From positions 62,001 to 126,000 of the IMG/VR virus record IMGVR_UViG_3300020202_000001: 64,000 nucleotides of DNA; one strand, given 5' to 3'. Positions 9,672-62,776 of this stretch are shown here, one piece after another. Both the position numbers and the translations under genes were made by a program. Positions within the stretch are counted from its first letter, which is position 1; each line of letters opens with the position of its first letter. The notes under the pieces were generated by a model that ran no database searches, was not told the DNA's origin, and was given only the letters and a program-made list of their open reading frames with translations.

Positions 9672-9908
9672 ATGTGTTTCGTGGACAAGGACGAGCCCGA
9701 GCGGAGCCGCTGGTTCTCGGACGTCGTCATCGTGCTGGCGTGTCTGCTCGTGTTGCCGTTTCTGGCCGTAGGAGGCAAGGATGCCCGGGACTCTGACGAC
9801 CCAAGTCGCCCTACCGAAGCCGCCGTCGTCCGCGACGGAGGAGCCGGACTACGACACGATCTGGAAGGACTGGAAGGCGGCCCCGCCCGACCCGGCGACG
9901 AACGCTAG
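9672..9908 (+). CDS. Possible small membrane protein (doubtful)
   Basis: One hydrophobic stretch (VVIVLACLLVLPFLAVGG) and an upstream GGAGG, but it overlaps the sigma gene by 128 nt. Confidence 0.25.
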   Translation: MCFVDKDEPERSRWFSDVVIVLACLLVLPFLAVGGKDARDSDDPSRPTEAAVVRDGGAGLRHDLEGLEGGPARPGDER

Positions 9909-10539
9909 GACGCTGCGGTCGCTCGACCCGCTGATCGACCGGGCCGCCAAGACCCACGTCGGCGACGTGAACCCGCTCGTGCGGAGCCGGGCTCGCAGCC
10001 TCGCGCTGCAGTCGCTGCAGACGTACGACCCGAACAAGGGCCGGTTCCAGAGCCACTTCTACAACCAGATGCAGGGGCTCAAGCGGTACAGCGCCCAGAC
10101 CGCGCAGGGCGTGCGGGTGCCGGAGCGGGTCGTGCTCGACCGGCGGGCGCTGGACATGGCCGAGGGCGAGCTGCGGGACCGCCTCGGCCGCGACCCGACC
10201 GACGACGAGCTGGCCGACCACAGCGGGTTCAACGTCCGCCGCATCCAGAAGGTCCGGGGGTACAGCCCGGCGATGAGCCAGGGGTACTTCTCGCAGCTCG
10301 GCGAGGACGGCGGCGGGTTCGAGCCGGGCGTGAACCGCAGCACGACGGCGGCGTGGGAGCAGCTGATCCTCGACGACCTGAACCCGGTCGACCGGAAGAT
10401 CTTCGACTACCACCGGCAGGGGATGTCGAACCAGCAGATCGCGGCGAAGCTGCGGCGGAGCGCGGGCCTCATCAGCCAGCGCAAGGCCGTGATCCAGAAG
10501 CTGCTGGACCAGGAGCAGGAACTCAGCCCGTTCCAGTGA
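9781..10539 (+). CDS. RNA polymerase sigma-70-family factor (SigB/F/FliA-like architecture)
   Basis: Region 2 YDPNKGRFQSHFYNQM, VRVPER, region 3 ELRDRLGRDPTDDELADHSG, region 4 HTH MSNQQIAAKLRRSAGLISQRK. Confidence 0.8.
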   Translation: MPGTLTTQVALPKPPSSATEEPDYDTIWKDWKAAPPDPATNARTLRSLDPLIDRAAKTHVGDVNPLVRSRARSLALQSLQTYDPNKGRFQSHFYNQMQGLKRYSAQTAQGVRVPERVVLDRRALDMAEGELRDRLGRDPTDDELADHSGFNVRRIQKVRGYSPAMSQGYFSQLGEDGGGFEPGVNRSTTAAWEQLILDDLNPVDRKIFDYHRQGMSNQQIAAKLRRSAGLISQRKAVIQKLLDQEQELSPFQ

Positions 10540-11789: not shown

Positions 11790-13442
11790 ATGCCGCTCGA
11801 AATCACCGAACTCGACGCCCTGGACCCCACGCTGGTCGAGCAGTCGCTCGCCCAGACGGCCCAGCGCGTGCAGGAGGCGAACCCGACCCTCGACCTGAAG
11901 CGGGGCGTGTTCCACGATCTGCTCGTCTACCTGCACGCGCTGCTCGACAGCCAGCTCCGGGGCGGGGTCATCAACCGCTACCTGTCGGCCCGGTCGCTGC
12001 TGGACATCCAGGCCGACCCGACGCTCGCGGACCCGCTGGTCGTCGAGCGGGTGCTGAGCAACTTCCGCCTCTCGCGGGGCGAGGGGGCGGCGGCGACCGG
12101 CGAGGTGACGATCGTCATCAACCGGCCGATCAGCGTGACGGTCGGCAGCGGGGCGGTGTTCGTCGCCAACGGCCGGCGGTTCAGCGCGAACTCCGCGTTC
12201 ACCGCCAAGCCCGAGGCGGCCCAGATCAACGGCCCGACCGACCGGCTGCTCACGCGGCTGAACGACGGGAACTACGCGTTCACGATCGACGTGACGGCGG
12301 CCGACGAGGGGACCGAGTCCCTGATCGCCAAGAACACGCTGGTCGTGCCGGTCGCCCAGCCGAACGGGTACGTCACCAGCTACGCGACCAGCGACTTCTC
12401 CGGCGGCCTGAACCCGGAGACGAACACCGAGCTGCTGGAGCGGCTGCAGCTCGGCGTCTCGTGCAAGGCCCCGAGCAACCGGCCGAACATGCAGGCCATG
12501 CTCCGCGACCAGGCGGAGTTCAGCCGCGTCGTCCACAGCTCGATCGTCGGGCACGGCGACGAGGAGATGCTCCGCGACCAGCACACGATCTTCCCGGTCA
12601 GCCTCGGCGGCCGGGCCGACTGGTACGTCCGCACGGTCGAGCGGGTCCAGCGGATGACGCTGAAGAAGACGGCGACGCTCGTGTCGGTCGGCGACGACGG
12701 CACGGGCGTGTGGGCGTTCGGCCTCACGCGGGACGACGCCCCCGGCTTCTACGAGGTCGCGTCCGTCCTGCGGCCCGAGGCGGAGAACGTCGCCGGCACG
12801 CTGCCGATCACGTCCGACGTGCGGGGCGTGGACCTGACCGGCGACGGGTTCGTCCCGGACGTCGAGACGGTGGCCGAGGGGGCGTACACGAGGTACCAGA
12901 CGGCCTCGGTCCGGTTCCACGACGTGGCGACCGACCACGGGGCGCTGACGCCCGGGGCGACGCGGGAGTACGACGTCACGGTCACCGCCCTGCCGCTCGT
13001 CGGCCTGATCCACGACTACGTCACCGACTTCGAGGTGCGGAGCTACGGGAGCGACCTGTTGGTCAAGGCCCCGATCCCGTGCTTCCTCAAGGTCCAGTTC
13101 CGCGTGGCGAAGAACCGCAAGCAGGCGGACCCCGACGTGCTGGCGATCGCCGACGCCGTCGCCCGCGCCGCCAACACGACCGGGTTCACCGGCCGGCTGT
13201 ACGCCGGGCACCTGCAGGACGTGATCGCCGGCTACCTGCAGGACGGGATGAGCGTCGGGTCGATCGACATGTTCGGCCGCATCCGCCACCCTGACGGGAC
13301 CAGCTCGTACGTCCGCGGCGACGAGGTGCTCGTGATCCCGTCCGTCGACGGGGCGATGGTCAGCCCCCGCACCGTGCAGTTCTTCCTGGACCCGGCCGAC
13401 GTCGAGATCCAGGTCAGCACCGAGATCCCCGTGCCCCAGTGA
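11790..13442 (+). CDS. Baseplate J-like (gp6-like) wedge protein
   Basis: 550 aa; GAAATGEVTIV..GSGAVFVANG, SDFSGGLNPETNTELLERL and related BplJ-type segments; follows gp25-like gene. Confidence 0.75.
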   Translation: MPLEITELDALDPTLVEQSLAQTAQRVQEANPTLDLKRGVFHDLLVYLHALLDSQLRGGVINRYLSARSLLDIQADPTLADPLVVERVLSNFRLSRGEGAAATGEVTIVINRPISVTVGSGAVFVANGRRFSANSAFTAKPEAAQINGPTDRLLTRLNDGNYAFTIDVTAADEGTESLIAKNTLVVPVAQPNGYVTSYATSDFSGGLNPETNTELLERLQLGVSCKAPSNRPNMQAMLRDQAEFSRVVHSSIVGHGDEEMLRDQHTIFPVSLGGRADWYVRTVERVQRMTLKKTATLVSVGDDGTGVWAFGLTRDDAPGFYEVASVLRPEAENVAGTLPITSDVRGVDLTGDGFVPDVETVAEGAYTRYQTASVRFHDVATDHGALTPGATREYDVTVTALPLVGLIHDYVTDFEVRSYGSDLLVKAPIPCFLKVQFRVAKNRKQADPDVLAIADAVARAANTTGFTGRLYAGHLQDVIAGYLQDGMSVGSIDMFGRIRHPDGTSSYVRGDEVLVIPSVDGAMVSPRTVQFFLDPADVEIQVSTEIPVPQ

Positions 13443-13453
13443 GGGAGGCCGCC

Positions 13454-13717
13454 GTGCTACGCATCAAGGTCAAGGAGGCGTGCGACTTCATCTCGTTCAC
13501 CGACACCTGTTGCGTCAGCGGCAGCAGCACGCGGACCGAGGGGCAGTTCCCGCTCGGGCACGAGATGGACGCGATGGGCATCAACCGCGACGTCCCCCAG
13601 CGGGGCGTGTCGACGATCTGGGTCGACAACGGCACGCTCCACATGGACCGGTGGCTGGTGCCGAGCGTCGCGGTCGAGGTGCTGGACTTCGTCGGAAACC
13701 CTAGCGAGCGACTCTGA
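13454..13717 (+). CDS. Small hypothetical protein (87 aa)
   Basis: GGGAGG SD before GTG 13454; TGATG coupling to the next gene. Confidence 0.5.
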   Translation: MLRIKVKEACDFISFTDTCCVSGSSTRTEGQFPLGHEMDAMGINRDVPQRGVSTIWVDNGTLHMDRWLVPSVAVEVLDFVGNPSERL

Positions 13718-15258
13718 TGGCAGACTTCAAGTTCCCAGCGTCCACGCTCGACCGGCCCGAGGAGCTGCTGGCCGCCCTCGGCTCCCTCTGGGACAACACG
13801 TACCTCGGGAACGACCTCGTGCTCGCCCTGTGCCGGGCCAAGCTCGCCCAGCAGCGGCAGGCGTACGCGGACGGCCGCGAGCTGGTCGACGCGTGCGGCC
13901 GGCTCGACGTGCCCGTCCACCACACCGAGGAGTGGGTCGAGCTGCGGCTGGAGGAGTCGAAGAAGAACGCCGGCGACTACTCGCTGCTGAAGTTCGGCGA
14001 CCCGGGCGAGTTCGAGCGGGGCGGGGCGGCCGCGTGGGGCGTCCCGACCGCCCGCCCGCTGCACGCCTGGCGGCTGCCGGACGGCGTCGTCGGCGTGCCC
14101 GCGATCTTCAACCGGATCGCCGACCCGTCCCGGTCCCTCGTCGAGGGCGTCGACTACGTCCTGCGGGACGGCCACGTCGTGTTCCGCGACGACCCGTTCG
14201 CCGACGAGCTGGTCCCCAAGGCCAGCGTGTTCGTGCAAAACGTCGAGACGGACCGGACCCTGAGCCTGTGGGGCTTCCGGTGCTCGGTCGACCGCCAGAA
14301 CGTGTACCGGCAGTTCGGGTACGTCCTCGGGCTTCAGCTCCCGAGCAGCGAGCACTACAAGCGGCTCGTCAACGCCCTGTTCGACGCCCTGGTCGAGGGG
14401 TCGACGGGCTCGGCCGTACACGCGGCGTGGTCGGCGATCACCGGCATCCCGCTCGCCGCCGGCGGCGAGACGGTGGAGGCCGTGGTCGCGGAGGCCACCA
14501 GGACCCTCGTCGTGACCGATCGTGCCGTATACGCGGTCCCAGGGGCCTCCACGGTCACCGTAGCGGCGGGGCAGGCCCTGCGAGCCGGCCAGCCGGTCTG
14601 CGACGCCCTCACGTTCCACGAGTTCAACCGAGGTCAGGTGCCGGCACAGATCAGGTCGCTTGCCCTCGGCCGGGGCTTCCTCGCCGCCGGCTACTTCGGC
14701 GACCTCGTGTTCGAGAACAAGGAGGTGCCGCTGGTCGTCGGGGCGGACGCCGAGGGCAACACCCGGCTGAGCTGGCGGCTGACCGGGTGGCCCGGCGACG
14801 TCGAGAAGTTCTTCGACGACCTGCACGAGCGGGGCCTCGCCCGCGGCCAGACGCTCGCCCACCTGCTCGACCGCCGCCCGGCCGGCGCGCGGGACACGGA
14901 GCCGACCGCCGGTGCCCTGCCGGCGACGATCAACCCGTTCGGGTTCCTCTGCCGGAACGTCCTGCGGAACAACGTCTTCGTCGTCCGGGTCCGCGTGGCG
15001 GCCACCACGGGCGGGGTCGGGACGGCGGCGGCCAAGTTCCTCCGCCGCGTCGTGCCGCCGCAGACGGCCATGATCGTCCTGGCCGAATTGGAGCTGGCCG
15101 ACGACGCGGTTATCATGGACGGACCGGCCACCGAGACCCGCCCCGGCTACGAAGAGGCCCTGAAGCTCTTCCTGGGCATGTCGTTGTCGGAGACGATCAG
15201 CCCGAACCTGGTCACGGAAGACCTGCAGTTCCGCCAGATCCGCGGACGCTGCCAGTGA
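13717..15258 (+). CDS. Baseplate wedge/tail protein (tentative)
   Basis: 513 aa directly after baseplate J; family not recognised. Confidence 0.5.
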   Translation: MADFKFPASTLDRPEELLAALGSLWDNTYLGNDLVLALCRAKLAQQRQAYADGRELVDACGRLDVPVHHTEEWVELRLEESKKNAGDYSLLKFGDPGEFERGGAAAWGVPTARPLHAWRLPDGVVGVPAIFNRIADPSRSLVEGVDYVLRDGHVVFRDDPFADELVPKASVFVQNVETDRTLSLWGFRCSVDRQNVYRQFGYVLGLQLPSSEHYKRLVNALFDALVEGSTGSAVHAAWSAITGIPLAAGGETVEAVVAEATRTLVVTDRAVYAVPGASTVTVAAGQALRAGQPVCDALTFHEFNRGQVPAQIRSLALGRGFLAAGYFGDLVFENKEVPLVVGADAEGNTRLSWRLTGWPGDVEKFFDDLHERGLARGQTLAHLLDRRPAGARDTEPTAGALPATINPFGFLCRNVLRNNVFVVRVRVAATTGGVGTAAAKFLRRVVPPQTAMIVLAELELADDAVIMDGPATETRPGYEEALKLFLGMSLSETISPNLVTEDLQFRQIRGRCQ

Positions 15259-23259: not shown

Positions 23260-24696
23260 ATGGCCAAGCCAGGCTTCTACAACGACAACCGCAACCGGGC
23301 CTTCCCGTTCGTGAAGGGCACGGTCGGGGACCTGTTGGCCGCCGCGGACACGGTTGCCGCCCTGCCGGCCGCCACGGTCGTCGACGCCGGGTTCGTCCTC
23401 GGCCTGCGGTCCGGGTTCATCGACGGCGTCCACAAGATCCGGCTGGAGAAGGTCCGCCGCGTCGGCGACGACGTGTACTTCGACTTCGCCTCCGACGCGC
23501 CGGCGCTGGTCGGCAAGCCGCTCACGTTCCACCGGTCGGCCGCGTCGGCCGAGGAGTACGAGACCGAGCACGTCGAGGTGCTGGACGAGGGGTACGTGAT
23601 CGTCAGCGCGGTGTCCCAGTCGGTCAGCGAGGGCGACCCGACGCCGGTCAACTGCGGGTGCATCCAGCTCGGCAAGAGCGGCAGCTTCGTCCCGAGCTGC
23701 ACGGGCACGATGCGGCTGTTCCTGAACGACGACAACTTCGCGGACAACAAGGGGTCGTTCACCGTCACGATCAACGGCGAGACGTTCGTCGTCCCGTCGA
23801 CCGAGCCGAACGGCGTGCCCGGCCCCGACGTCATCGCCGGCCAGACGTACGCCTACACGGCCAGCGGGCTCGTGGAGTTCGACGAGCGGCAGGGCGTGAA
23901 GCGGATGTGCGACCCGGACGGGCCGACGAGCGAGTCGATCAAGTACGGCATCCCCGGCGAGCACCCGTGCCCCGGGCTGGTCGAGTGGTCGCTGGTCGGG
24001 AAGCTGACCGGCAGCCCGGTCGTGACCCCGCCGCCGCCCACGACCACGCCGTCCGAGACGTGCGAGGGCGAGCCCCTGTGGGGCGGGTACCTCGTGACCG
24101 GCCGGCTGGCGGACCTCCTGACCGTGCTCCCGGGCGACGGGGAGGTGACCGGGGCGGTCGGGGCGGGCCTGGTCGAGCCCGCGCTGGTCCAGAACGACGC
24201 CAACTCGTACATCGGCAGCGTGAACGTCGGCAACGCGGACCGCACGCGGGTGGACGCTCCCGGCGACTGCCCGCCGTTGACCTGGCCCCACGACACCGGC
24301 GAAGATGTGATCTTCGTCAACGCGAGCTGCCTGCGGGGCGACATCCGGTTCAAGCCCGGGTACAACGCGATCGTCCGGCAGGAGTCGGACACGAACCTGC
24401 TGATCTTCGGTGCCGAGGTCGGGGCCGGCGAGGGCCAGCCGTGCGACCAGGTGCCGCTGTTCGACGGGGAGGTGCCGCCGGCCGGGAGCGCCCTGCTGGA
24501 GGGCGGCCCCCGGTGCAACGAGGTGATCCGCTCGATCAACGGCGTGGGCGGCAAGTTCGCCGCGCTGCTGGGCGGGACGGGCGTCACCGTGACGCAGCTG
24601 CCGGCGTCGAACAAGGTCGTCGTCGACGTGAACATGGGCGGGCTTGCGGCGTGCTTCGCGTCGAGCGAGTTCTCGGAAGTGTCGGAAACGCTGTAG
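23260..24696 (+). CDS. Virion protein, paralogue 5, with a lectin-like insert
   Basis: [13 protein letters not shown]-terminus; [20 protein letters not shown]; [14 protein letters not shown]. Confidence 0.65.
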
Positions 24697-24745
24697 TACC
24701 ACCGGCGGCCAAGGACGGCCGTCGCACCAGACACGGAGGTCTGTC

Positions 24746-27700
24746 ATGCCGGTCCCCTGCACGGGCTCCACGCCCGGCGTCTTCACGCCGAGCGGCACGG
24801 TCCACACGATCGAGACCGACATCACGAAGGGCACCCCCGTGTACTTCGCCGGGGGCATGTCGTTCCCCGCCGGCCGGTACCGGATCAAGTACCTCCGCGG
24901 CTGCCTGAAGTTCCGCCACGACTTCGACTGGGGCGTCGACACGACGTTCAAGGTCAGCGTCGACCCCGGCAGCGGGGCCACGGACATCGGCCAGGCCCCG
25001 GGCGTCGAGAACCGGCTGCCGAAGGTGAACCACCAGGGCGACGGGTCCAACCCGAACGCCAAGATCCGCGGCAAGGGCTGGCCGACGAAGGGCGAGGCCG
25101 AGGCGGCCAACCAGAACGCCCCGCCGTTCGAGTTCAACCACGGCGGCGGCAAGATCGGCGTGCGGCTGGCCGACAGCCCGTACTCGGACAACATCAGCGG
25201 CAAGCCGAGCCCGAAGTACACGCTCCAGCTCCTGGAGCCGTGCACGGTCCCGATCCCGCCCGGCGTCCCGCCCGAGACGCCCGAGGTCACGATCGTCACC
25301 TACCCGCCCACGCCGGAGGCGTTCCCCCGCGCCCGCGTGAAGTGCGGCGTGCCCGAGGTGCCGGGCATCCCCCAGCTGCCGATCATCAACGTCTGCATCG
25401 TGCCGCCCGCCCCGCAGCCGATCCTGGCGTGCCCGGAGCCGGTGGTGAACATCCCGCCGCCCGAGCAGGCGATCCCGTGCCCGCAGATCCAGGTCGGGGC
25501 GTCGTTCGAGGTGAAGGTCGGGCCGCCGTCCGTCACGCTGACCACGACCTCGACCAACACGACCGACGCGTGCGGCGACGCGACGTGCGGCACGCAGATG
25601 CACTTCGCGTTCCAGCTGCCGCCGACGCCGCAGATCCCCTGCCCGCAGATCACCGTGCAGTCCCAGACGACGGTGACGCCGGGCAACCCCGACGCCACGG
25701 TCACGGTGGAGACGCTCCCGGGCGGCCCGCCGGACCCGTGCCGGTTCAAGTTCAACTTCGCGTTCCAGCTCCCCCCGCCGCCGCCGTGCCCGCAGATCGA
25801 GGCGGAGTACACGTCGACGACGACCGAGGGCGACCCGTCCGCGAGCGTGACGGTCACGAAGACCGCGGACGACCCGTGCCGCTACCTGTTCAACTTCGCG
25901 TTCCAGATGCCGCCCGCCCCGCAGTGCCCGGAGATCGAGGCCGAGGCCACGACCACGGTCACCGAGGGCAGCCCGTCCGCGAGCGTCGAGGTCACGAAGG
26001 AGAGCGATGACCCGTGTAAGTACAAGTTCGCGTTCGCGTTCCAACTTCCACCGGCCCCTCAAGTTCCCTGCCCGCAAATCGAGGCTACATCTACCACGAC
26101 GGTCACCGAGGGCAGCCCCTCCGCCAGCGTCGAGGTGACCAAGGAGTCGGACAACCCGTGCTCCTACAAGTTCTCGTTCGCGTTCCAGCTTCCGCCCGCC
26201 CCGCAGGCACCGCAGTGCCCGACGATCACGGGCAGCGCGTCGGCGACCAGCACCGAGGGCGAGGCCAGCGCCAGCCTCGACGTGCAGAAGACGGGCGACG
26301 ACCCCTGCGCGTACAGCTTCACGTTCGCGTTCCAGGTCCCCAAGGGGCCGCAGGGGCCGTACGGCCCGACCGGGCCGTGCCCCCAGGTGACGGCGTCGGC
26401 GTCGGCGACCACCACGGAGGGCGACGCAGCCAGCGCCTCCGTCGAGGTCAGCGAGCAGTCCGGCTGCCACAAGGTGTTCACGTTCGCGTTCCAGCTCCCC
26501 AAGGGGCCGCAGGGTCCGCAGGGGCCGACCGGCCCGCAGGGGCCGCGCGGGTACCAGGGTCCGCAGGGTCCGACCGGCCCGCAGGGCAGCACCGGGCCGC
26601 AGGGGCCGACCGGCCCGCAAGGCATGACGGGGGCACAGGGTCCTCAGGGGCGTACCGGCCCGCAGGGTCCGACCGGCCCGCAGGGGGCGGACGGCGTCTG
26701 CCCGCAGTGCCCGCCCGGCGCTCAGGGTCCGACCGGGCCACAGGGTCCGACCGGCCCGATGGGTGCTCAGGGTGCCGTGGGCGCTCAAGGTGCCCCCGGC
26801 CCGCAGGGTGCCACGGGGGCGACCGGGGCGACCGGCCCGCAAGGCCCGACCGGGCCGACCGGCGCGACCGGTGCGACCGGCGACACGCCCGACGTCGGCT
26901 TCGCAACCACCGCCAACGCACTGCCGCACGGCTCGCCGCCGACCGCAGACGTCATCCCGTTCAGCGGCGGGCCGCAGAACCCGGTCTTCCTCATCACGTT
27001 CGGCATCCCCGAAGGTGCCCAAGGCGCGACCGGCCCCCAAGGCCCGACCGGCCCGCAAGGCACGACCGGGGCGACAGGGGCCACCGGCGACACGGGACCG
27101 CAGGGTCCGACCGGCCCGACCGGTGCGACCGGCGACGTCGGTCCCCAAGGGCCGACCGGCCCGCAAGGAGCTACCGGCGCGACGGGTGCTACGGGCGAAG
27201 TTGGGCCACAGGGTCCGACCGGCGCTACGGGTGCGACCGGTGATGTCGGTCCGCAGGGTCCGACCGGCCCGCAGGGAGCCACTGGCGCGACGGGTGCCAC
27301 GGGCGAGATCGGACCTCAAGGCTCGACGGGTGCCACCGGCCCGCAAGGCCCCACGGGTCCGACCGGCGCGACGGGTGCCACGCCCGAGATGGCCCTGACC
27401 TCGACGGCGAACACGCTGCCGGCCGGGTCGGCGGCGACGGCCACCGTCTCGCAGACGGCCGGCGGGCCGCAGAACCCGACGTTCGAGTTCACCTTCGGCA
27501 TCCCCGAGGGTGCCGCCGGGGCGACGGGCTCCCAAGGTTCCACCGGCCCGCAAGGTCCCACGGGTCCGACCGGCGGCACGGGCGACATGGGTCCGCAGGG
27601 ACCGACCGGTGCCACCGGCGCTCAAGGGGCGACGGGGCCACAGGGTCCGACCGGCCCGCAGGGTGCGACCGGGGCGACGGGTTCGATGGGTCCGCAGGGT

Positions 27701-29158
27701 CCGACCGGGCCGACCGGGCCGACCGGCGCGAACGGTGCTGACGGCGCTGTCGGACCGCAAGGCCCGACCGGCCCGCAAGGAGCGACCGGCGCAACGGGCG
27801 AGACGGGGCCAGCCGGCCCGGCTTCGGTCGGCGAGACCGGCCCGCAAGGCCCGGCAGGCGCGACGGGTGCCACCGGCGCTCAGGGCAGCGTGGGTGCAAC
27901 GGGTCCGCAGGGACCGACCGGTGCCACCGGCTCGACGGGCTCGCAAGGGCCGATCGGGCCGACCGGGTTCCAGGGCGGCACCGGCGCTTCCGGCCCGCAA
28001 GGCCCCACCGGTGCCACCGGTGCCACGGGTGCCCAAGGCCAGAACGGCTCGACCGGGCCGCAGGGTCCGACCGGAGCAACGGGCGCGACCGGGCTCCAGG
28101 GTCCGACCGGCCCGAGCGGGCAACAGGGCTCGCAGGGTTACCAGGGTCCGACCGGTCCGGTCGGCCCGCAGGGCAGCACGGGTGCCACCGGCGCGACCGG
28201 TGCCCAAGGCCAGAACGGCTCGACAGGTCCGCAAGGCCCCACCGGCCCGAGCGGCCAGCAGGGATCGCAAGGCGTCCAAGGTCCGGCGGGTCCGACCGGG
28301 CCGCAGGGTGCCACCGGTGCGACCGGCGCGACCGGACCGCAGGGTTCGCCGGGTGCCACCGGCCCACAGGGTCCGACCGGGGCGACCGGCCAGACGGGTC
28401 CCCAAGGCCCGATGGGTCCCACCGGTTACCAGGGCGGCATGGGGGCGACGGGTGCCACCGGCGCGCAGGGTCCGATGGGCTACACCGGAAGCACCGGCGC
28501 TCAGGGTCCGGTGGGGCCGAGCGGTGCTCAGGGTCCGATGGGCTACACCGGCAGCACCGGGGCTCAAGGCCCGATGGGGCCGAGCGGCTACAACGGCAGC
28601 GACGGGCCGCAGGGTCCGATGGGGCCGAGCGGCCAGCAAGGGCCGCAGGGCCAGCAGGGCATGATCGGGCCGCAGGGTCCGACCGGCTCGACCGGCAGCA
28701 ACGGCGCGGACGGCCCGCAGGGGCCGAGCGGTCCGACCGGCCCGCAGGGCGGCAAGACGGCGATCGTCGCGATCGACGGCAAGTACCGCGGCCTGTTCTG
28801 CACGGAAGGCCCGGAGGTCTGGTTCCAGGACTTCGTGGACGTCGAGGTCGAGATCGACGAGTGCGGGTGCGGCACGACGCGGCACCCGATCGACCCGCTG
28901 TTCATCAAGGCGTGCGAGCCGGGCTCGATCCGCGTCGCGTCCCACGCCGTCGACGCGCTCGGGCTGTCGTGCTCGTTCCTCGACGGCGGCGTGATCGTCG
29001 TCGCGGTGAACGAGGCGGTCGGTGCCAAGCGGGCGACGGCCGTCGTCGGCCTGGTCGGCGTCCGCAAGGGCTTCGCCAAGGTCCGGTTCCCCGAGTACAG
29101 CGAGGCCCAGTTCAAGGCGAACACCGCCTTCTACCAGTCGGCGTACACCCATGGCTAA
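24746..29158 (+). CDS. Collagen-like fibre protein (1470 aa)
   Basis: Start ATG 24746 with GGAGG SD; N-terminal globular domain, seven Cys-paired repeats, long Gly-X-Y region, C-terminal [14 protein letters not shown] domain. Confidence 0.85.
25472..26500 (+). repeat. Seven ~45-aa repeats CPxI...EGxxSASVxV...DPCxYxFxFAFQxP
   Basis: Counted directly in the translation. Confidence 0.85.
26504..28750 (+). repeat. Gly-X-Y collagen repeats (GPQ, GPT, GAT dominant), about 215-220 triplets with two ~44-aa interruptions
   Basis: Seen directly in the translation. Confidence 0.95.
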
Positions 29159-31947: not shown

Positions 31948-31967
31948 TCGCAAGGAGGCGATTGAAC

Positions 31968-32276
31968 ATGGCCGACACCGAACCCCGACACAAGCTGTAC
32001 GTCCTGGAGGAGGGTGCCCTCACCGCCCTGGCGAGCGACGAGAAGTTCCTCAAGGAGTTCCCGTTCCTGCGGTCCCTGAAGTCCGTGCCGAAGGCCGGGT
32101 GCGGGACGTGCGGCGGGAGCAACAACCAGCGGGCGAGCGCGTACACCTCGGCCAAGGCGGCGATCGCCGGCATGGGCCAGGACAAGAAGCGGAAGCTCAA
32201 GCAGATGCTCAGCGCCAAGCACGTCCGGGTCGTGTACACGACCGGGAGCGGAAAACCGACCCAGCTGACGTTCTAA
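31968..32276 (+). CDS. Small CxxC protein (102 aa)
   Basis: Start ATG 31968 with AAGGAGG SD; GCGTCG; similar to 31172..31498. Confidence 0.65.
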   Translation: MADTEPRHKLYVLEEGALTALASDEKFLKEFPFLRSLKSVPKAGCGTCGGSNNQRASAYTSAKAAIAGMGQDKKRKLKQMLSAKHVRVVYTTGSGKPTQLTF

Positions 32277-32302
32277 AGAACCGCCGCAAACGCGTCAGAA
32301 TA

Positions 32303-32541
32303 GTTGAGCGGATCTTACTTACCGCTCGGCAGCAGGCCACGCGACGTCCGCCTCCCGAAAGGGATCGGACGCCGCACCCTCCCCGCCATCGACCCCGACG
32401 CGACAGCCACCCGGCGACCCCTCACGGGGCCGCGCGAGTTCCTGATCGACTGTCGGCGGACGATGAGCGGGGAGGGCGAGTAGGTATCGGTCGGCGTCGC
32501 CGGCCTTTTCCTTAGCGGTCGCGGCGGGTAGGATGCCCGCC
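32303..32541 (+). ncRNA. Candidate structured RNA or cis-element (strand assumed)
   Basis: 306-nt gap between genes with at least four stems, including TCCC-GAAA-GGGA and a 15-bp long-range stem. No known RNA family recognised. Confidence 0.45.
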
Positions 32542-32582
32542 TGGGTTCCCAACACAGTGTCCACGAACAGAAGGAGCTACCC

Positions 32583-33011
32583 GTGGCCAAGACCACAACC
32601 AAGCGTGCGCCGGTCCCCCTCCCCGAAGTCGACGAGGCCCCGGCCGCCGCGGACAACCCGTGGCGGTGCGAGGAGATGCCGGTCGTCGTGCTCGAAGCCG
32701 AGTGCGCGTTCTCGGCCGACAACGCCAAGGCGACGATCGTCGTCGAGCACGAGGGCACCGACTTCCCCCGGGCGATCGAGGAGCTGGGCTCGACCGCCAG
32801 CCGCAACCTCGCGATCTCGTACGCCAGCGCCGCCGGCGTCGGCGACGCCCGGCTGAACGGCAACATCGAGGGGCCGTACGCCGTCAACGAGGAGGGCACG
32901 CCGCTCGAAGAGGTCAAGGGTCCGGGCGGCAAGCCTTACCCGCCCCAGCACCCGAAGATGCAGCCGTACCGGTACCGGGCCAACGTGCCCGTGTGCCGCA
33001 AGCTCGTCTGA
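32583..33011 (+). CDS. Hypothetical protein (142 aa)
   Basis: AAGGAG SD before GTG; GC3-rich codons. Confidence 0.65.
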   Translation: MAKTTTKRAPVPLPEVDEAPAAADNPWRCEEMPVVVLEAECAFSADNAKATIVVEHEGTDFPRAIEELGSTASRNLAISYASAAGVGDARLNGNIEGPYAVNEEGTPLEEVKGPGGKPYPPQHPKMQPYRYRANVPVCRKLV

Positions 33012-42550: not shown

Positions 42551-43082
42551 GGGCCGGGCGGACGTCACGCGGGACAAGGACCTGGTGGCGGCCGCCCGGG
42601 CGTCGTGGCAGTCGTTCTCGAACGCCCGGCCCCGGACGGCGTCGCTGACGCTGTCCGGCGTCATCACGCTCCACCAGATCTACGAGCTGGGCGAGATCTT
42701 CAACGGGTCGAGCGGCAACCCCGCCCTCGACATCGTCGACACGCTGGCGCTGGAGGAGCACCTGAAGGTCGACCAGCTGGCGGACGGGATCGTCAAGGCC
42801 CTGCTCGGGCCGGCGATCGACAGCGACAAGGGCGTCACGCCGACCGGCGTGAAGGCCAAGGCGATCCTGAACGTCGTGTTCGGCGACGGCGACGACCCGA
42901 GGGAGACCGCCCTCAAGGCGATCGCCGGCGTCGGGCTCGACAACGCGACCGTGTGCCTCGGCATGGTGCTGATGCTCAACGGCGTCCGCGAGCACGGCCG
43001 TACGTTCGCGTACGGCGAGCTGGCGGACGTGCTCGGGGCGACGCGGTACCTGATCGAGAAGACCGGCAAGGAAACCACATGA
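42465..43082 (+). CDS. Hypothetical protein
   Basis: 205-aa GC3-rich ORF. Confidence 0.55.
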   Translation: MAKGKNPKAKQPKTFVQRVTAWTRGNLSKGRADVTRDKDLVAAARASWQSFSNARPRTASLTLSGVITLHQIYELGEIFNGSSGNPALDIVDTLALEEHLKVDQLADGIVKALLGPAIDSDKGVTPTGVKAKAILNVVFGDGDDPRETALKAIAGVGLDNATVCLGMVLMLNGVREHGRTFAYGELADVLGATRYLIEKTGKETT

Positions 43083-49522: not shown

Positions 49523-50454
49523 AGAAACCCAGGCCGAAGCGACGCCTCGACATCCCCACGGTCTCCGGCAAGTTCGGGACCGGGGCGACGGTGTGGGGCG
49601 CGAAGCACGAGTACACGGTCGGGAAGCTGGTCGGACAGACCACGACGAGCGACCTGTACCTCGCGACCCCCGGCGTCGGCGACCCCGCCTTCATCAAGAT
49701 CGTCCGCGACCCGGACGACAACGACCTCGCCGAGCGTGAGGTCGAGATCCTGAGCCACGTCTACCCCCGCGTCTGGGCGGAGGGCAAGAAGTACCTGCCC
49801 CAGCTCGTCGAGGTCGTCGACGTGTCGGACGAGGACGGCAAGCGGAAGGCGCTCGTCTTCCCGTACGACCCGCGGTTCTACTCGCTGGCCGAGGTGCTGG
49901 CCGAGTACCCGCAGGGCGTCGAGCCGAAGCACGCGGCGTGGATGATTAACCGGATGCTGGAGGCGATCCACTTCGCCAACTACACGGCCGGCGTCGTCCA
50001 CGGGGCGCTGCTGCCCCACAACTTCCACGTCCACGCCGACACGCACGCCGGGCTGATGACCGAGTGGTCGTTCGCGGCCCGCGACGCGTACGAGGTTCAC
50101 GACGGCTCGGGCACGAACCTGAAGCCGGGCGAGGACGTCGTCGCGGTCGACGACGCGTACCAGGCGTGGTACCCGCCGGAGGTGCTGAAGAAGGAGCCGC
50201 ACAACTTCTCGGTCGACCTGTGGATGATGAGCAAGTGTGCGATCCAGCTGTTGGGCGGTGACCCCCTTTCGGGTAAGCTGCCCGCGTCGGTGCCGAAGCC
50301 GATCGCCGGGTTCCTGCGGTACATCACGCTCCAGCAGGACCCGTCGAAGCGGCCGCAGGAGGCCCTCAAGCTCCACGACGAGTTCGGCGACATCTGCAAG
50401 CAGGTGTTTGGCCCCAAGAAGTTCCACAAGTTCCACATGCCGCCGCGGGCGTAA
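49519..50454 (+). CDS. Hanks-type protein-kinase-fold protein with degenerate catalytic motifs (pseudokinase-like)
   Basis: Start ATG 49519; FIKI..alphaC REVEIL, VHGALLPHN, LMTEWS, WYPPEVL, SVDLWMMSKC. Confidence 0.7.
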   Translation: MKKPRPKRRLDIPTVSGKFGTGATVWGAKHEYTVGKLVGQTTTSDLYLATPGVGDPAFIKIVRDPDDNDLAEREVEILSHVYPRVWAEGKKYLPQLVEVVDVSDEDGKRKALVFPYDPRFYSLAEVLAEYPQGVEPKHAAWMINRMLEAIHFANYTAGVVHGALLPHNFHVHADTHAGLMTEWSFAARDAYEVHDGSGTNLKPGEDVVAVDDAYQAWYPPEVLKKEPHNFSVDLWMMSKCAIQLLGGDPLSGKLPASVPKPIAGFLRYITLQQDPSKRPQEALKLHDEFGDICKQVFGPKKFHKFHMPPRA

Positions 50455-62017: not shown

Positions 62018-62776
62018 ATGCCCCTGCCCGCACTGGACGCCGTCGACCGCGAGTTCCGCCGCCCACTACACTCGTTCTTCGCGAGGCGGGTGGGCGGCGG
62101 CAACGCGGACGACGCGGTGCAAGACACGCTCCTGCAGCTCCACCGGATCGCAGACCGGTACGACCCCGCGGTCCCGCTGAGCAAGTGGGTCTTCGGGGTC
62201 GCCAAGAACATCGCGAAGCGGGTCAACCGCTCGCGCGGAAGGCACTACATGGCCAGCATCAACGGAAACGGAAACCCCAACAGCGACAGGACCGGCGTCA
62301 TCGACCCGGTCGACGAGAAGGTGCGGTCGCCGCACGACAACACGATCGCCGAGGAGCTGAAGGCGAAGATCCGCGCCGTCATCCACCAGCTGCCCGACGA
62401 CATGCAGAACGTGGTGAACCTCCACCTGCTGCAGGGGTTCTCGCAGAAGGAGACGGCGAAGCGGCTGAAGTGGGGCGACACGAAGGTCTACAACACGATG
62501 AAGAAGGCCCGGCCGCTGCTCGCCGAGCGGTTCCAGGTCGAGCTGCCCGAGACGTGGCAGGCCCGGGTCCGGGCGGGGGCCAAGGCGCGGCGAGGTCGGG
62601 CGGCGGCGACGCCCCCGCCGAGGTCGCACAAGAAGGGCGGCCGCGTCGCGGCCCTGCTCGCGAGCGTGCCGCCACCGCCGCTCCCCGCCGCCGGCCCGCT
62701 CCCGGTGCCGACGATGGTGAGCACCCTGAAGGAGATCGCCCACCACGCCGCGGCGCTGGCGAGGCTGTTGGAGTAG
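62018..62776 (+). CDS. ECF-type sigma factor with a C-terminal extension
   Basis: ADDAVQDTLL...YDP...LSKWVFGVAKN (region 2); IHQLPDDMQNVVNLHLLQGFSQKETAKRL (region 4). Confidence 0.8.
   Translation: MPLPALDAVDREFRRPLHSFFARRVGGGNADDAVQDTLLQLHRIADRYDPAVPLSKWVFGVAKNIAKRVNRSRGRHYMASINGNGNPNSDRTGVIDPVDEKVRSPHDNTIAEELKAKIRAVIHQLPDDMQNVVNLHLLQGFSQKETAKRLKWGDTKVYNTMKKARPLLAERFQVELPETWQARVRAGAKARRGRAAATPPPRSHKKGGRVAALLASVPPPPLPAAGPLPVPTMVSTLKEIAHHAAALARLLE

What the first reader, a model, noticed from the sequence alone, without database searches (positions are those of the whole stretch)
32303..32541. Highly structured 240-nt non-coding segment at the boundary between modules
Seen in the largest intergenic gap (32277-32582): stem 1 GTTGAGCGG/CCGCTCGGC (32303-32330); stem 2 GCG-CGTCCG-TCCC[GAAA]GGGA-CGGACG-CGC (32341-32375) with a GNRA loop; a long-range stem CCCTCCCCGC-CATCG (32377-32391) pairing with CGATG-GCGGGGAGGG (32461-32476) that encloses CGACAG/CTGTCG and CCCC-TCAC-GGGG; stem 4 GGCGGGTA/TGCCCGCC (32523-32541). 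I cannot match it to tRNA, tmRNA, SRP, RNase P or 6S RNA. Inference: a novel phage ncRNA, a regulatory leader, or a single-strand origin/packaging element. High GC raises chance pairing, but bulged nested stems of this length are less likely by chance.
Basis: partly seen in the sequence, partly recalled or inferred. Interest (0 to 1): 0.6.

Follow-up and report, generated by a model that had tools for sequence, protein, structure and literature searches.

The report
Phage promoter, structured leader and terminator
The folded 240-base stretch is real and non-coding, and it is best read as a control region between two gene blocks of a giant phage: a phage-type promoter, three RNA hairpins and a terminator placed just ahead of the next gene.

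Summary
All four stems are at the stated coordinates. The gap 32277-32582 folds far better than shuffles (z -4.4) and is the most structured of 39 gaps in this 224-kb, 69% GC phage genome. It is non-coding and matches no Rfam family.

Comparison with relatives splits it into modules:
- P1, a promoter-like motif (CTAAAG-N17-CAGAAT), overlaps the upstream stop codon. It occurs three times in this genome and about 24 times in a clade of large phages. That clade encodes its own RNA polymerase and a sigma-like protein.
- Stem 1 lies where the P1 transcript would begin. Stem sequences covary and the loop keeps TTA.
- Stems 2 and 3 have unrelated sequence in relatives, but keep the same order and spacing in the two closest ones. 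Stem 3 has a counterpart upstream of all eight homologous genes examined.
- An intrinsic terminator (32489-32516) carries a tail conserved across the clade.
- A -10-like TAGGAT, the ribosome-binding site and the 142-aa gene follow.

My best reading (0.6) is a cis-acting leader and punctuation region with partial or regulated termination. A stand-alone RNA of about 210 nt or a put-like antiterminator is not excluded. An origin, packaging site or small protein is not supported. No transcript data could be obtained.

The parts
31962..32276 (+). Upstream gene of 104 aa, the last gene of the tail, baseplate and fibre block. Its TAA stop (32274-32276) lies inside the P1 -35-like hexamer.
   Evidence: GC3 0.94. 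Homologous genes precede the same element in L002, L004 and L045. The upstream block holds Baseplate_J and collagen-repeat proteins.
32273..32303 (+). P1 promoter-like motif: CTAAAG (32273-32278), a 17-nt spacer ending AAACGCGT, then CAGAAT (32296-32301) and AG.
   Evidence: It is the only match in the window, with 0 expected in 100 shuffles. There are 3 copies in the genome, all intergenic and on the + strand. About 24 instances in related large phages give the consensus CTAAAT-N9-AAACGcGTCAtAATA. Promoter function is inferred; the start site is not mapped.
32303..32330 (+).
   Evidence: Folds. A hairpin follows P1 in nearly all family instances. Covariation: 91.8% of cells are paired against 75.9% when shuffled, 6 of 8 pairs change on both sides, and slid controls fall to 25-49%. 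The 44 nt after P1 have mean z -2.1 in 23 instances, the + strand is more stable in 17 against 6, and G-U pairs number 37 against 16.
32341..32375 (+).
   Evidence: L002 and L004 have a hairpin of unrelated sequence at the same place, 0-1 nt before HP3. Pairs in partial register show changes on both sides.
32377..32476 (+).
   Evidence: All eight regions examined upstream of a homolog of the 142-aa gene hold one hairpin of 75-105 nt closed by 14-22 bp. They share no sequence, and the regions have z -4.5 to -10.5.
32489..32516 (+). Intrinsic terminator: a 7-bp GC hairpin (32489-32505) followed by the tail TTTTCCTTAGC (32506-32516).
   Evidence: Found by the terminator scan. The tail motif occurs 4 times in the genome and 29 times in the loci of the clade, and 20 of those abut a stable hairpin. 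Termination itself was not tested.
32523..32541 (+). It contains a -10-like hexamer TAGGAT (32529-32534), a possible second promoter (P2).
   Evidence: The stem is in the fold but is not conserved. TAGGAT, TATGAT or TATCAT is present at the corresponding place in L005, L002 and L003 and absent in L044, L045 and L008, where the terminator tail abuts the ribosome-binding site.
32570..32585 (+). Shine-Dalgarno GAAGGAG (32570-32576) and GTG start (32583-32585) of the downstream gene.
   Evidence: Sequence. The stretch AACAGAAGGAGCTAC is shared with L002.
32583..33011 (+). Downstream gene of 142 aa, function unknown, the first gene of the next block.
   Evidence: GC3 0.94. Homologs P0002-P0006 (alignment A1). 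No Pfam or PHROG family. The AlphaFold model is too poor to use (pLDDT 43).

Best explanation
The gap is a composite transcription-control region read on the + strand. It lies at the junction between the tail, baseplate and fibre genes and the next gene block of a 224-kb phage that encodes its own RNA polymerase and sigma-like factors.

The proposed order of events is as follows. Transcription starts at P1, a clade-specific two-hexamer promoter that overlaps the stop codon of the upstream gene. The RNA begins with a 5' stem-loop (HP1), which most likely protects or marks the 5' end. Two further stable hairpins follow (HP2 and HP3). The RNA then meets an intrinsic terminator of the clade's conserved type at 32489-32516. 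A leader RNA of about 210 nt is released there, and only the polymerases that read through go on to the 142-aa gene and the genes beyond it. That gene may also have its own weak promoter (TAGGAT). The same terminator and hairpins also end and stabilise transcripts arriving from the upstream operon.

What is shown: the stems; their statistical excess; the recurrence and conservation of P1, HP1, HP3 and the terminator tail; and the non-coding nature of the gap. What is inferred: that P1 fires, where it starts, that the terminator is partial or regulated, and what HP2 and HP3 do. For HP2 and HP3 I favour a barrier or processing site, for example double-stranded RNA cut by RNase III, together with attenuation.
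For: Structure: the fold reproduces all stems with z -4.4, the most negative of 39 genome gaps.

P1:
- It is unique in the window, with 0 expected by chance.
- It has 3 copies in the genome, all intergenic and on the + strand.
- The same motif sits directly after the homologous upstream gene in L002, L004 and L045.
- About 24 instances occur in large phage contigs of 44-69% GC.
- In relatives it lies 25-60 nt before ribosome-binding sites, as promoters do.
- The genome encodes a beta/beta'-N fusion and a beta'-C RNA polymerase and a sigma-like protein at window 9781-10539. Both have homologs in all five P1-bearing large phages tested.

HP1: a hairpin follows nearly every P1, with covariation and a + strand bias.

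HP2 and HP3: the architecture HP1-HP2-HP3, with 0-1 nt between HP2 and HP3, is kept in L002 and L004 with different sequence. A long hairpin precedes the gene in all eight homologous loci examined.

Terminator:
- It was found by the scan.
- Its tail motif recurs after strong hairpins across the clade.
- All three P1 sites of this genome have a terminator 40-210 nt downstream and before any gene, while the genome has only about a dozen + strand terminators.
- In L044, L045 and L008 the tail abuts the ribosome-binding site, so the gene there must be reached by read-through.
- The hairpin of the third P1-proximal terminator (genome 196183, -18.7 kcal/mol) and the hairpin at genome 50147 after the first P1 site (-11.6) are weaker than the -22 to -29 of the P1-independent ones. 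The window's own terminator missed that script's -10 kcal/mol cut-off.
Against:
- The order P1 then terminator is unusual. In relatives the usual order is terminator then P1.
- L002 keeps the tail motif but has no convincing terminator hairpin in front of it.
- HP2 and HP3 are nearly perfect Watson-Crick helices, so both strands fold equally well. By energy alone, a DNA-level role or a minus-strand RNA is not excluded.
- Only three genomes carry the full HP1-HP2-HP3 arrangement, so covariation of HP2 and HP3 rests on architecture and not on a statistical test.
- A canonical start 6-8 nt after the -10 hexamer would leave the lowest 2-4 pairs of HP1 untranscribed.
- The covariation count for HP1 was made on an alignment fitted to the model.
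Confidence: 0.6

Rival explanations
1. It is a stand-alone small RNA gene. P1 and the terminator delimit an RNA of about 210 nt (HP1-HP2-HP3-terminator) that acts in trans, for example on host or phage messages or proteins. The two other P1-to-terminator units of the genome would give RNAs of about 41 and 83 nt that share the HP1 head.
For: A promoter and a terminator flank a non-coding, highly structured segment. All three P1 sites of this genome are followed by a terminator before any gene. Two of the three short units (window and genome 196082) share the HP1 sequence kTGAGC..CTTAs..GCTCGGC; the third (genome 50084) shares the 5' part and the CTTAG loop but lacks the GCTCGGC arm. Hairpins at both ends would make such an RNA stable.
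Against: In relatives the same P1 and hairpin lead straight into protein genes, and in L045 a gene lies between HP1 and HP3. HP2 and HP3 have no conserved sequence or loop that could serve as a seed or binding site. No Rfam family matches.
Confidence: 0.15
2. It is an RNA-based processive antiterminator or processivity signal, working like HK022 put or lambda nut. The nascent leader, alone or with a phage factor, would modify the polymerase that made it, so that it ignores the terminator at 32489-32516 and later ones in the long same-strand gene block.
For: Stem-loops lie just downstream of a promoter and upstream of a terminator, as for put (PMC9378689) and conAn (PMC8191782). HP2 and HP3 abut with 0-1 nt between them in three phages. 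HP1 has conserved loop and flank sequence at the genome's P1 sites. Nearly all genes are on one strand, with few terminators. The phage has its own polymerase.
Against: put RNAs are about 70 nt and share sequence, whereas HP2 and HP3 total about 135 nt and are near-perfect helices of unrelated sequence. P1 with its hairpin occurs in relatives with no terminator downstream. No Q-type antiterminator is encoded. No lambda-like boxA or boxB is evident.
Confidence: 0.1
3. It is a DNA-level element: a replication origin, a packaging site, or an operator or cruciform bound by a protein.
For: The long inverted repeats are near-perfect and fold equally on both strands. HP1 is an inverted repeat centred about 10-15 bp after the -10 hexamer, where operators often lie.
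Against: There are no iterons or direct-repeat arrays and no AT-rich tract. There is no sharp GC-skew turn at genome position 94.3 kb. The terminal repeats are at the record ends. Hairpins after P1 differ in stem length, loop length and sequence within a single genome, which does not fit one dimeric binding protein. G-U pairs and stability favour the transcribed strand.
Confidence: 0.05
4. The pairing is chance in GC-rich spacer DNA, or the gap holds a small protein gene (for example the 59-aa ORF at 32304-32483).
For: The GC content is 67%, and other gaps in the genome are also somewhat structured (median z about -2). The frame 32304-32483 is open, with third-position GC of about 0.87.
Against: The z of -4.4 was matched by none of 100 shuffles. 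Architecture and motifs are conserved in phages of 39-60% GC. The ORF has a TTG start inside HP1 and no Shine-Dalgarno sequence. ORFs in the homologous gaps are unrelated, with BLOSUM62 local scores of 18-28.
Confidence: 0.03

Closest known systems
Lambda late leader: pR' promoter, 194-nt 6S RNA, tR' terminator, with Q antitermination (my own knowledge)
   Same: A promoter is followed by an untranslated leader of about 200 nt that ends at an intrinsic terminator, in front of a long same-strand block of genes. Downstream expression requires read-through.
   Different: No Q homolog is encoded. The promoter hexamers differ. The leader here is three large hairpins. The same promoter type in relatives often has no terminator after it. 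Regulated read-through is not shown.
HK022 put RNA (PMC9378689)
   Same: A cis-acting folded nascent RNA made of adjacent stem-loops, placed just downstream of a phage promoter and upstream of terminators.
   Different: put is about 70 nt, with conserved sequence, an RNA triplex and contacts to the beta' zinc-binding domain. Here there are about 175 nt of near-perfect helices without conserved sequence, and no functional test has been made.
5'-terminal stem-loops that stabilise mRNA (E. coli ompA leader, T7 gene 10 leader) and T7 intercistronic RNase III sites (my own knowledge)
   Same: HP1 lies at or within a few nt of the predicted 5' end in nearly all P1 transcripts. HP3 is a long double-stranded RNA hairpin between cistrons, like the T7 R sites.
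   Different: The HP1 loop keeps a TTA or CTTAs motif, which suggests specific recognition. Neither cleavage nor half-life has been measured. The phage encodes no RNase III detectable with PF14622.
Sigma-28 (FliA, SigD, WhiG) class promoters, TAAA-N15-GCCGATAA (my own knowledge)
   Same: P1 has TAAA at -35, and the distance from TAAA to ATAA is the same (19 nt). The region just upstream of the -10 is conserved (GCGTCATAA compared with GCCGATAA).
   Different: The match is by eye only. The phage sigma-like protein hits the FliA/WhiG, SigB/F/G and RpoD models only weakly and far below their cut-offs. Which polymerase and which sigma read P1 is unknown.
conAn bipartite antitermination of Gram-positive conjugative plasmids (PMC8191782)
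   Same: A large structured RNA element near the start of a very long operon allows read-through of internal terminators.
   Different: conAn needs a partner protein encoded next to the RNA. No homology has been tested or is known, and the host range is different.

Membership tests
Intrinsic (factor-independent) terminator | A GC-rich hairpin immediately followed by a T-rich tract on the transcribed strand | tested here: met
   Hairpin 32489-32505 (7 bp, 6 of them G-C) followed by TTTTCCTT.
Intrinsic (factor-independent) terminator | Recurrence at the ends of transcription units | tested here: met
   The tail motif follows strong hairpins 4 times in this genome, once between convergent genes (genome 193756). 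In clade loci 20 of 29 instances abut a hairpin.
Intrinsic (factor-independent) terminator | RNA 3' ends form there | not testable with these tools
Sigma-70-family promoter (P1) | Two conserved hexamers at a fixed spacing of 17 +/- 1 bp, with a -10 close to TATAAT | tested here: met
   CTAAAk-N17-CAkAAT in all 23 aligned instances. The built-in sigma-70 scan does not call it, because its -35 is not TTGACA.
Sigma-70-family promoter (P1) | Location upstream of genes and co-oriented with them | tested here: met
   All 3 genome copies are intergenic and on the + strand. In relatives the motif lies 25-60 nt before ribosome-binding sites.
Sigma-70-family promoter (P1) | A mapped transcription start and dependence on a sigma factor | not testable with these tools
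   There is only a correlation: the sigma-like gene and the polymerase genes are conserved in the P1-bearing phages.
HK022 put RNA | About 70 nt, two stem-loops, sequence similarity among put sites | tested here: not met
   HP2 plus HP3 is about 135 nt (HP1-HP3 about 175 nt), and the stems have unrelated sequence among homologs. The put features are taken from PMC9378689.
HK022 put RNA | Suppresses downstream terminators in cis through the beta' zinc-binding domain | not testable with these tools
   Needs reporter or in vitro assays.
Lambda Q / qut late antitermination | A Q-family antiterminator protein is encoded | tested here: not met
   PF06530 and PF03589 give no match in the genome. Divergent analogues are not excluded.
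Lambda Q / qut late antitermination | A promoter followed by a short terminated leader ahead of a long operon | tested here: met
   From P1 to the terminator is about 210 nt here, and 41 and 83 nt at the other two P1 sites.
Lambda nut site (boxA plus boxB) | A boxA consensus, and a 15-nt boxB hairpin with a GNRA-like pentaloop | tested here: not met
   HP1 has a 9-bp stem and a 10-nt loop, and no CGCTCTTTA-like boxA was seen by eye.
Known RNA families (tRNA, tmRNA, 6S, RNase P, SRP, riboswitches, group I/II introns) | A match to an Rfam covariance model or to ARAGORN | tested here: not met
   No match at gathering level in the whole window. Within the gap, the only match at E up to 10 is CRISPR-DR29 at 19.8 bits against a cut-off of 39. 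ARAGORN finds nothing.
RNase III processing site (T7 R-site type) | An intercistronic hairpin with about two turns or more of double-stranded RNA | tested here: met
   HP3 has a closing stem of about 15 bp plus inner helices. Homologs have 14-22 bp closing stems.
RNase III processing site (T7 R-site type) | Cleavage by RNase III | not testable with these tools
   The host is unknown, and the phage shows no RNase III with PF14622.
Replication origin or packaging site | Iterons or an AT-rich unwinding element, a GC-skew turn, or proximity to the genome ends | tested here: not met
   There are only two weak two-copy direct repeats. The lowest GC is 0.56. The cumulative-skew minimum is at about 60-64 kb of the genome, with a shallow second low at 96-100 kb. 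The terminal repeats are at the record ends.

The most novel reading that the evidence does not exclude
The leader, meaning HP1 with its conserved TTA loop plus the abutting HP2 and HP3, could be a new RNA signal that acts on the phage's own polymerase (beta fused to beta'-N). It might work as a put-like antiterminator or as a loading site for a phage factor. The three P1-to-terminator cassettes of this genome would then be switch points that open long same-strand gene blocks. Alternatively, the RNA of about 210 nt could be a phage small RNA that acts in trans.
Probability: 0.2. Interest if true: 0.75.

Novelty: new member of a known kind. Interest (0 to 1): 0.45.

Why it matters
The genome belongs to an uncultured clade of phages of about 190-224 kb, spanning 44-69% GC. 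The clade carries a bacterial-type RNA polymerase (beta fused to the N-terminal part of beta', plus a separate beta'-C) together with a sigma-like protein. Neither its transcription signals nor its host is known to me.

This gap supplied three reusable signals of that machinery: a conserved promoter motif, a 5' stem-loop that accompanies it, and a terminator with a conserved tail. These can be used to annotate transcription units across the clade and to design in vitro transcription and reporter tests.

If the placement of a promoter before a terminator proves to be regulated, it would be a handle on how such phages time expression of long one-strand gene blocks. If not, the region is an ordinary, though unusually well-folded, piece of operon punctuation.

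Tried and rejected
Searches that found nothing or could not run:
- Rfam at gathering level and at E up to 10 gave no credible family. ARAGORN found nothing.
- blastn of the locus against cultured phages gave no match.
- Single-protein scans of IMG/VR with the 142-aa, 527-aa and 668-aa neighbours found no close relatives. Relatives came only from the word search and from profile scans.
- An IMG/VR scan for the G000-type HP1 pattern gave no further close relatives, so covariation of HP2 and HP3 could not be tested statistically.
- The contigs of P0005 and P0006 had no DNA available.

Analyses with limited value:
- The MAFFT and RNAalifold alignment of the three full leaders put only HP1 and part of HP2 in register, so it was not used as evidence for HP3.
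- The covariance-model search aligned many distant P1 sites with the hairpin deleted, leaving 73 of 216 cells usable.
- Pfam and PHROG gave nothing for the flanking genes or for the genes after the other P1 sites.
- The Atlas look-alike search for the 142-aa protein scored 0.84, below a usable level.
- The AlphaFold model of the 142-aa protein had pLDDT 43, so no fold search was run.

Ideas rejected:
- A small protein.
- An origin or packaging site.
- A Q-type antiterminator.
- A phage RNase III.
- A T7-type single-subunit polymerase. That search returned nothing, but its controls also returned nothing, so it is uninformative.
- The moraphage paper (PMC12619734) concerns a different lineage without polymerase genes.
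- Alternative pairings between HP3 and the terminator, or between HP3 and the coding start (pairs I8, I2, I5), were noted but not pursued because they may be chance in GC-rich DNA.

Full report
**Setting**

The window is bases 62001-126000 of a 224,418-bp IMG/VR virus record with terminal repeats, 69% GC. Almost all genes are on the + strand. Upstream of the finding lie baseplate-J, collagen-repeat and other large structural genes. Downstream lie a 142-aa gene of unknown function, DUF2997, an AAA ATPase and others. Neither this locus nor its neighbours have a close relative among cultured phages or, by single-protein scans, in IMG/VR.

- The fold energy is -150.4 kcal/mol against -126.1 +/- 5.6 for 100 dinucleotide shuffles, z -4.37, and no shuffle did as well.
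- Independent shuffles gave z -4.55 and -5.78.
- Of 39 gaps of 120-450 nt in the genome this is the most negative; the median is about -2.2. The phage's spacers are generally folded, and this one is the extreme.
- The reverse strand folds as well (z -5.65), because most helices are pure Watson-Crick.

The gap is non-coding. The codon-position GC signature of the flanking genes disappears within it. The 59-aa and 81-aa ORFs lack a Shine-Dalgarno sequence, and the ORFs of the homologous gaps are unrelated to them. There is no Rfam, tRNA or tmRNA match.

**Relatives split the segment into modules**

The 142-aa protein has five relatives in metagenomes. Their contigs, together with profile scans, gave loci L002, L003, L004, L005, L008, L044 and L045, which span 39-60% GC. 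Reading these beside the window shows five separable parts.

*1. P1, a promoter-like motif.*
- The window has CTAAAG-N17-CAGAAT-AG at 32273-32303, overlapping the TAA stop of the upstream gene.
- It is unique in the window, with none expected by chance.
- It occurs three times in the genome (50084, 94273, 196082), always intergenic and on the + strand.
- It stands at the same place, directly after the homologous upstream gene, in L002, L004 and L045.
- A pattern scan of IMG/VR and a regex over the fetched loci gave about 24 family instances, several per genome. They lie in large contigs (up to 219 kb) of 44-69% GC. The consensus is CTAAAT-N9-AAACGcGTCAtAATA.
- In many relatives the motif lies 25-60 nt before a ribosome-binding site.
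- Part of the consensus was imposed by the search pattern. However, instances found by other routes (L004, L005, L008, L045, extra L031 sites) agree with it.
- The layout of two hexamers 17 bp apart is that of sigma-70-family promoters. By eye it resembles the sigma-28 class (my own knowledge; not tested).

*2.
- A hairpin begins 3-10 nt after the -10 hexamer in nearly every P1 instance.
- Stem sequences differ: GAGCGG/CCGCTC in the window, GAGTGAC/GTCGCTC in L002, GTAGACGGC/GTTGTCTAC in L004.
- The loop keeps TTA. It reads CTTAs in all three copies of this 69% GC genome.
- On a covariance-model alignment, 91.8% of cells are paired against 75.9% in shuffles. Six of eight pairs change on both sides, and sliding the partner by 1-3 columns drops pairing to 25-49%. 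The caveats are that the alignment was fitted to the model and that only 73 cells were usable.
- The 44 nt after P1 have mean z -2.1 over 23 instances, and 22 of the 23 are negative.
- The transcribed strand is the more stable in 17 instances against 6, and it holds 37 G-U pairs against 16. This favours an RNA hairpin over a DNA operator.
- Stem and loop lengths vary within a single genome, which points the same way.

*3.
- L002 and L004 have the same order, HP1-HP2-HP3, with 0-1 nt between HP2 and HP3, and with essentially unrelated stem sequences.
- A hairpin of the HP3 kind (75-105 nt, closed by 14-22 near-perfect pairs) stands upstream of the gene in all eight homologous loci examined. The regions have z between -4.5 and -10.5.
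- In L045 a protein gene lies between P1-HP1 and HP3. The promoter with its 5' hairpin and the long hairpin with its terminator are therefore independent modules.

*4. The terminator.*
- The scan finds a 7-bp GC hairpin at 32489-32505 followed by TTTTCCTTAGC.
- The tail motif TTTTCyTTAsC follows strong hairpins at three other places in the genome, one of them between convergent genes.
- In lower-GC relatives it reads TTTTTTTTAGCTATTG. Of 29 instances, 20 abut a stable hairpin.
- In relatives the terminator is often followed within about 12-25 nt by P1.
- In this genome the order is reversed at all three P1 sites: the terminator comes 40-210 nt after P1 and before any gene.
- The hairpin at genome 50147 (-11.6 kcal/mol) and that of the terminator at genome 196183 (-18.7) are weaker than those of the other tail-motif terminators (-22 to -29). 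The window's own terminator fell below that script's -10 kcal/mol cut-off.

*5. The stretch between the terminator and the gene.*
- Stem 4 is not conserved. The hexamer TAGGAT (32529-32534) is: TAGGAT in L005, TATGAT in L002 and TATCAT in L003. This suggests a second, weaker promoter.
- L044, L045 and L008 have no such hexamer. Their terminator tail runs directly into the ribosome-binding site, so there the gene must be reached by read-through.

**The transcription machinery**

The genome encodes three relevant products.
- A 1501-aa protein with Rpb2 domains 3 and 6 followed by Rpb1 domain 2, that is, beta fused to beta'-N.
- A 918-aa protein with Rpb1 domain 5, that is, beta'-C.
- A 252-aa sigma-like protein at window 9781-10539. 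Its Sigma70_r3 score of 25.2 bits is just under the cut-off, it has region 4, and its NCBIfam hits to SigB/F/G, RpoD and FliA models are weak.

Both the polymerase and this sigma-like protein have homologs in all five P1-bearing large phage genomes tested. A second, ECF-type sigma at window 62018-62776 has none.

This correlation would explain why promoter and terminator signals stay constant across hosts of very different GC content. It does not show which enzyme reads P1.

A 2021 survey of cultured jumbo phages found either polymerase genes or sigma factors in a genome, but not both (PMC7824862).

**Interpretation**

The most economical reading is a cis-acting control and punctuation region. 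P1 fires. Its RNA starts with a protective or recognised 5' hairpin, runs through two stable hairpins and meets a moderately strong terminator. A leader of about 210 nt is released, and a fraction of polymerases continues into the next gene block. The same hairpins and terminator end and stabilise messages from the structural operon upstream. I give this 0.6.

The sub-steps are inferences:
- That the terminator is partial or regulated. This follows from the P1-then-terminator order and from relatives in which the tail abuts the ribosome-binding site.
- That HP3 is a double-stranded RNA processing or barrier element. This follows from its long, near-perfect helix that is free to vary in sequence.

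In architecture the nearest paradigm is the lambda pR'-6S-tR' leader, but no Q-type protein is encoded.

Other readings:
- A put-like RNA antiterminator (PMC9378689) or a conAn-like element (PMC8191782) remains possible. It fits poorly with helices that keep no sequence.
- A trans-acting small RNA is possible, for the reasons given under the rival explanations.
- An origin or packaging role finds no support.

**Limits**

No transcript evidence could be obtained. The host is unknown. Only three genomes share the full architecture. Both strands fold equally, so the strand assignment rests on gene orientation, on the T-run of the terminator, and on the G-U and stability bias of HP1.

Noticed in passing
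Window about 1258, 7633, 15977, 23243, 30363, 35625, 45444, 50472 and 60843, and about 35 sites genome-wide: A near-palindromic motif, gatcyaAAAACCGGTTTTgagatc, often running into GAAGGAG. It occurs about 35 times in the genome, mostly intergenic and 9-50 nt before + strand start codons (some copies, e.g. window 30363 and 7633, lie hundreds of nt from the next called gene). One copy is in the close relative L002, and none is convincing in more distant relatives. It is probably the main promoter or operator class of this sublineage. It is absent from the gap studied.
   Followed up: partly
Outside the window: genome 21647-26152 and 28817-31573 (L059:4648-9153 and 11818-14574): The phage encodes its own multisubunit RNA polymerase: beta (Rpb2 domains 3 and 6) fused to beta'-N (Rpb1 domain 2) in one 1501-aa protein, plus a separate 918-aa beta'-C (Rpb1 domain 5). 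Homologs of 52-72% identity are in five related large phages. In two of them the matches are spread over a much longer open frame, which may indicate inteins.
   Followed up: partly
Window 9781-10539 and 62018-62776: Two sigma-factor-like genes. The first is a divergent form with regions 3 and 4, conserved in all five related large phages tested. The second is an ECF-type sigma (63 bits against TIGR02937) with no homolog in those phages. A 2021 survey of cultured jumbo phages did not see a polymerase and a sigma in the same genome (PMC7824862).
   Followed up: partly
Genome 50084-50210 (L049:185-311): Another P1 copy is followed by a 41-nt hairpin and T5 terminator. After that come a strong Shine-Dalgarno sequence (GGAAGGAGG) and a two-codon ORF (ATG GAG TGA), about 220 nt before the next gene.
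   Followed up: no
Genome 42810-42912: A variant promoter, TTGACA-N18-CAGAAT-AG, with a canonical -35 but the P1-type -10 and a following hairpin. It lies just before a 436-aa gene of unknown function.
   Followed up: no
L004:372-965 (- strand): In this relative a 197-aa ORF lies between the 104-aa homolog and P1. It has CxxC motifs and looks by eye like an endonuclease VII or HNH homing nuclease. This suggests the spacer is a landing site for mobile DNA. No family scan was run on it.
   Followed up: no
Window 32312-32323 compared with 32506-32516, and the other P1 and terminator sites: The HP1 loop and 3' arm (ATCTTACTTACC) resemble the terminator tail (TTTTCCTTAGC, or TTTTCTTTACC elsewhere). 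A shared yTTAsC core appears after P1 and after terminators across the clade. It may be one signal used twice, or coincidence.
   Followed up: partly
Window 32377-32386, 32467-32479 and 32613-32628: The 5' arm of HP3 (CCCTCCCCGC) is nearly repeated inside the start of the 142-aa coding region (CCCCCTCCCCG at 32614-32625). The 3' arm of HP3 could therefore pair with the coding region instead (items D1 and I5). Conservation was not checked.
   Followed up: no
Window 24644-29158: A 1504-aa ORF made largely of collagen triple-helix repeats (Pfam Collagen, E 4e-90, 13 stretches), with an equally long open frame on the opposite strand. It is presumably a tail fibre.
   Followed up: no
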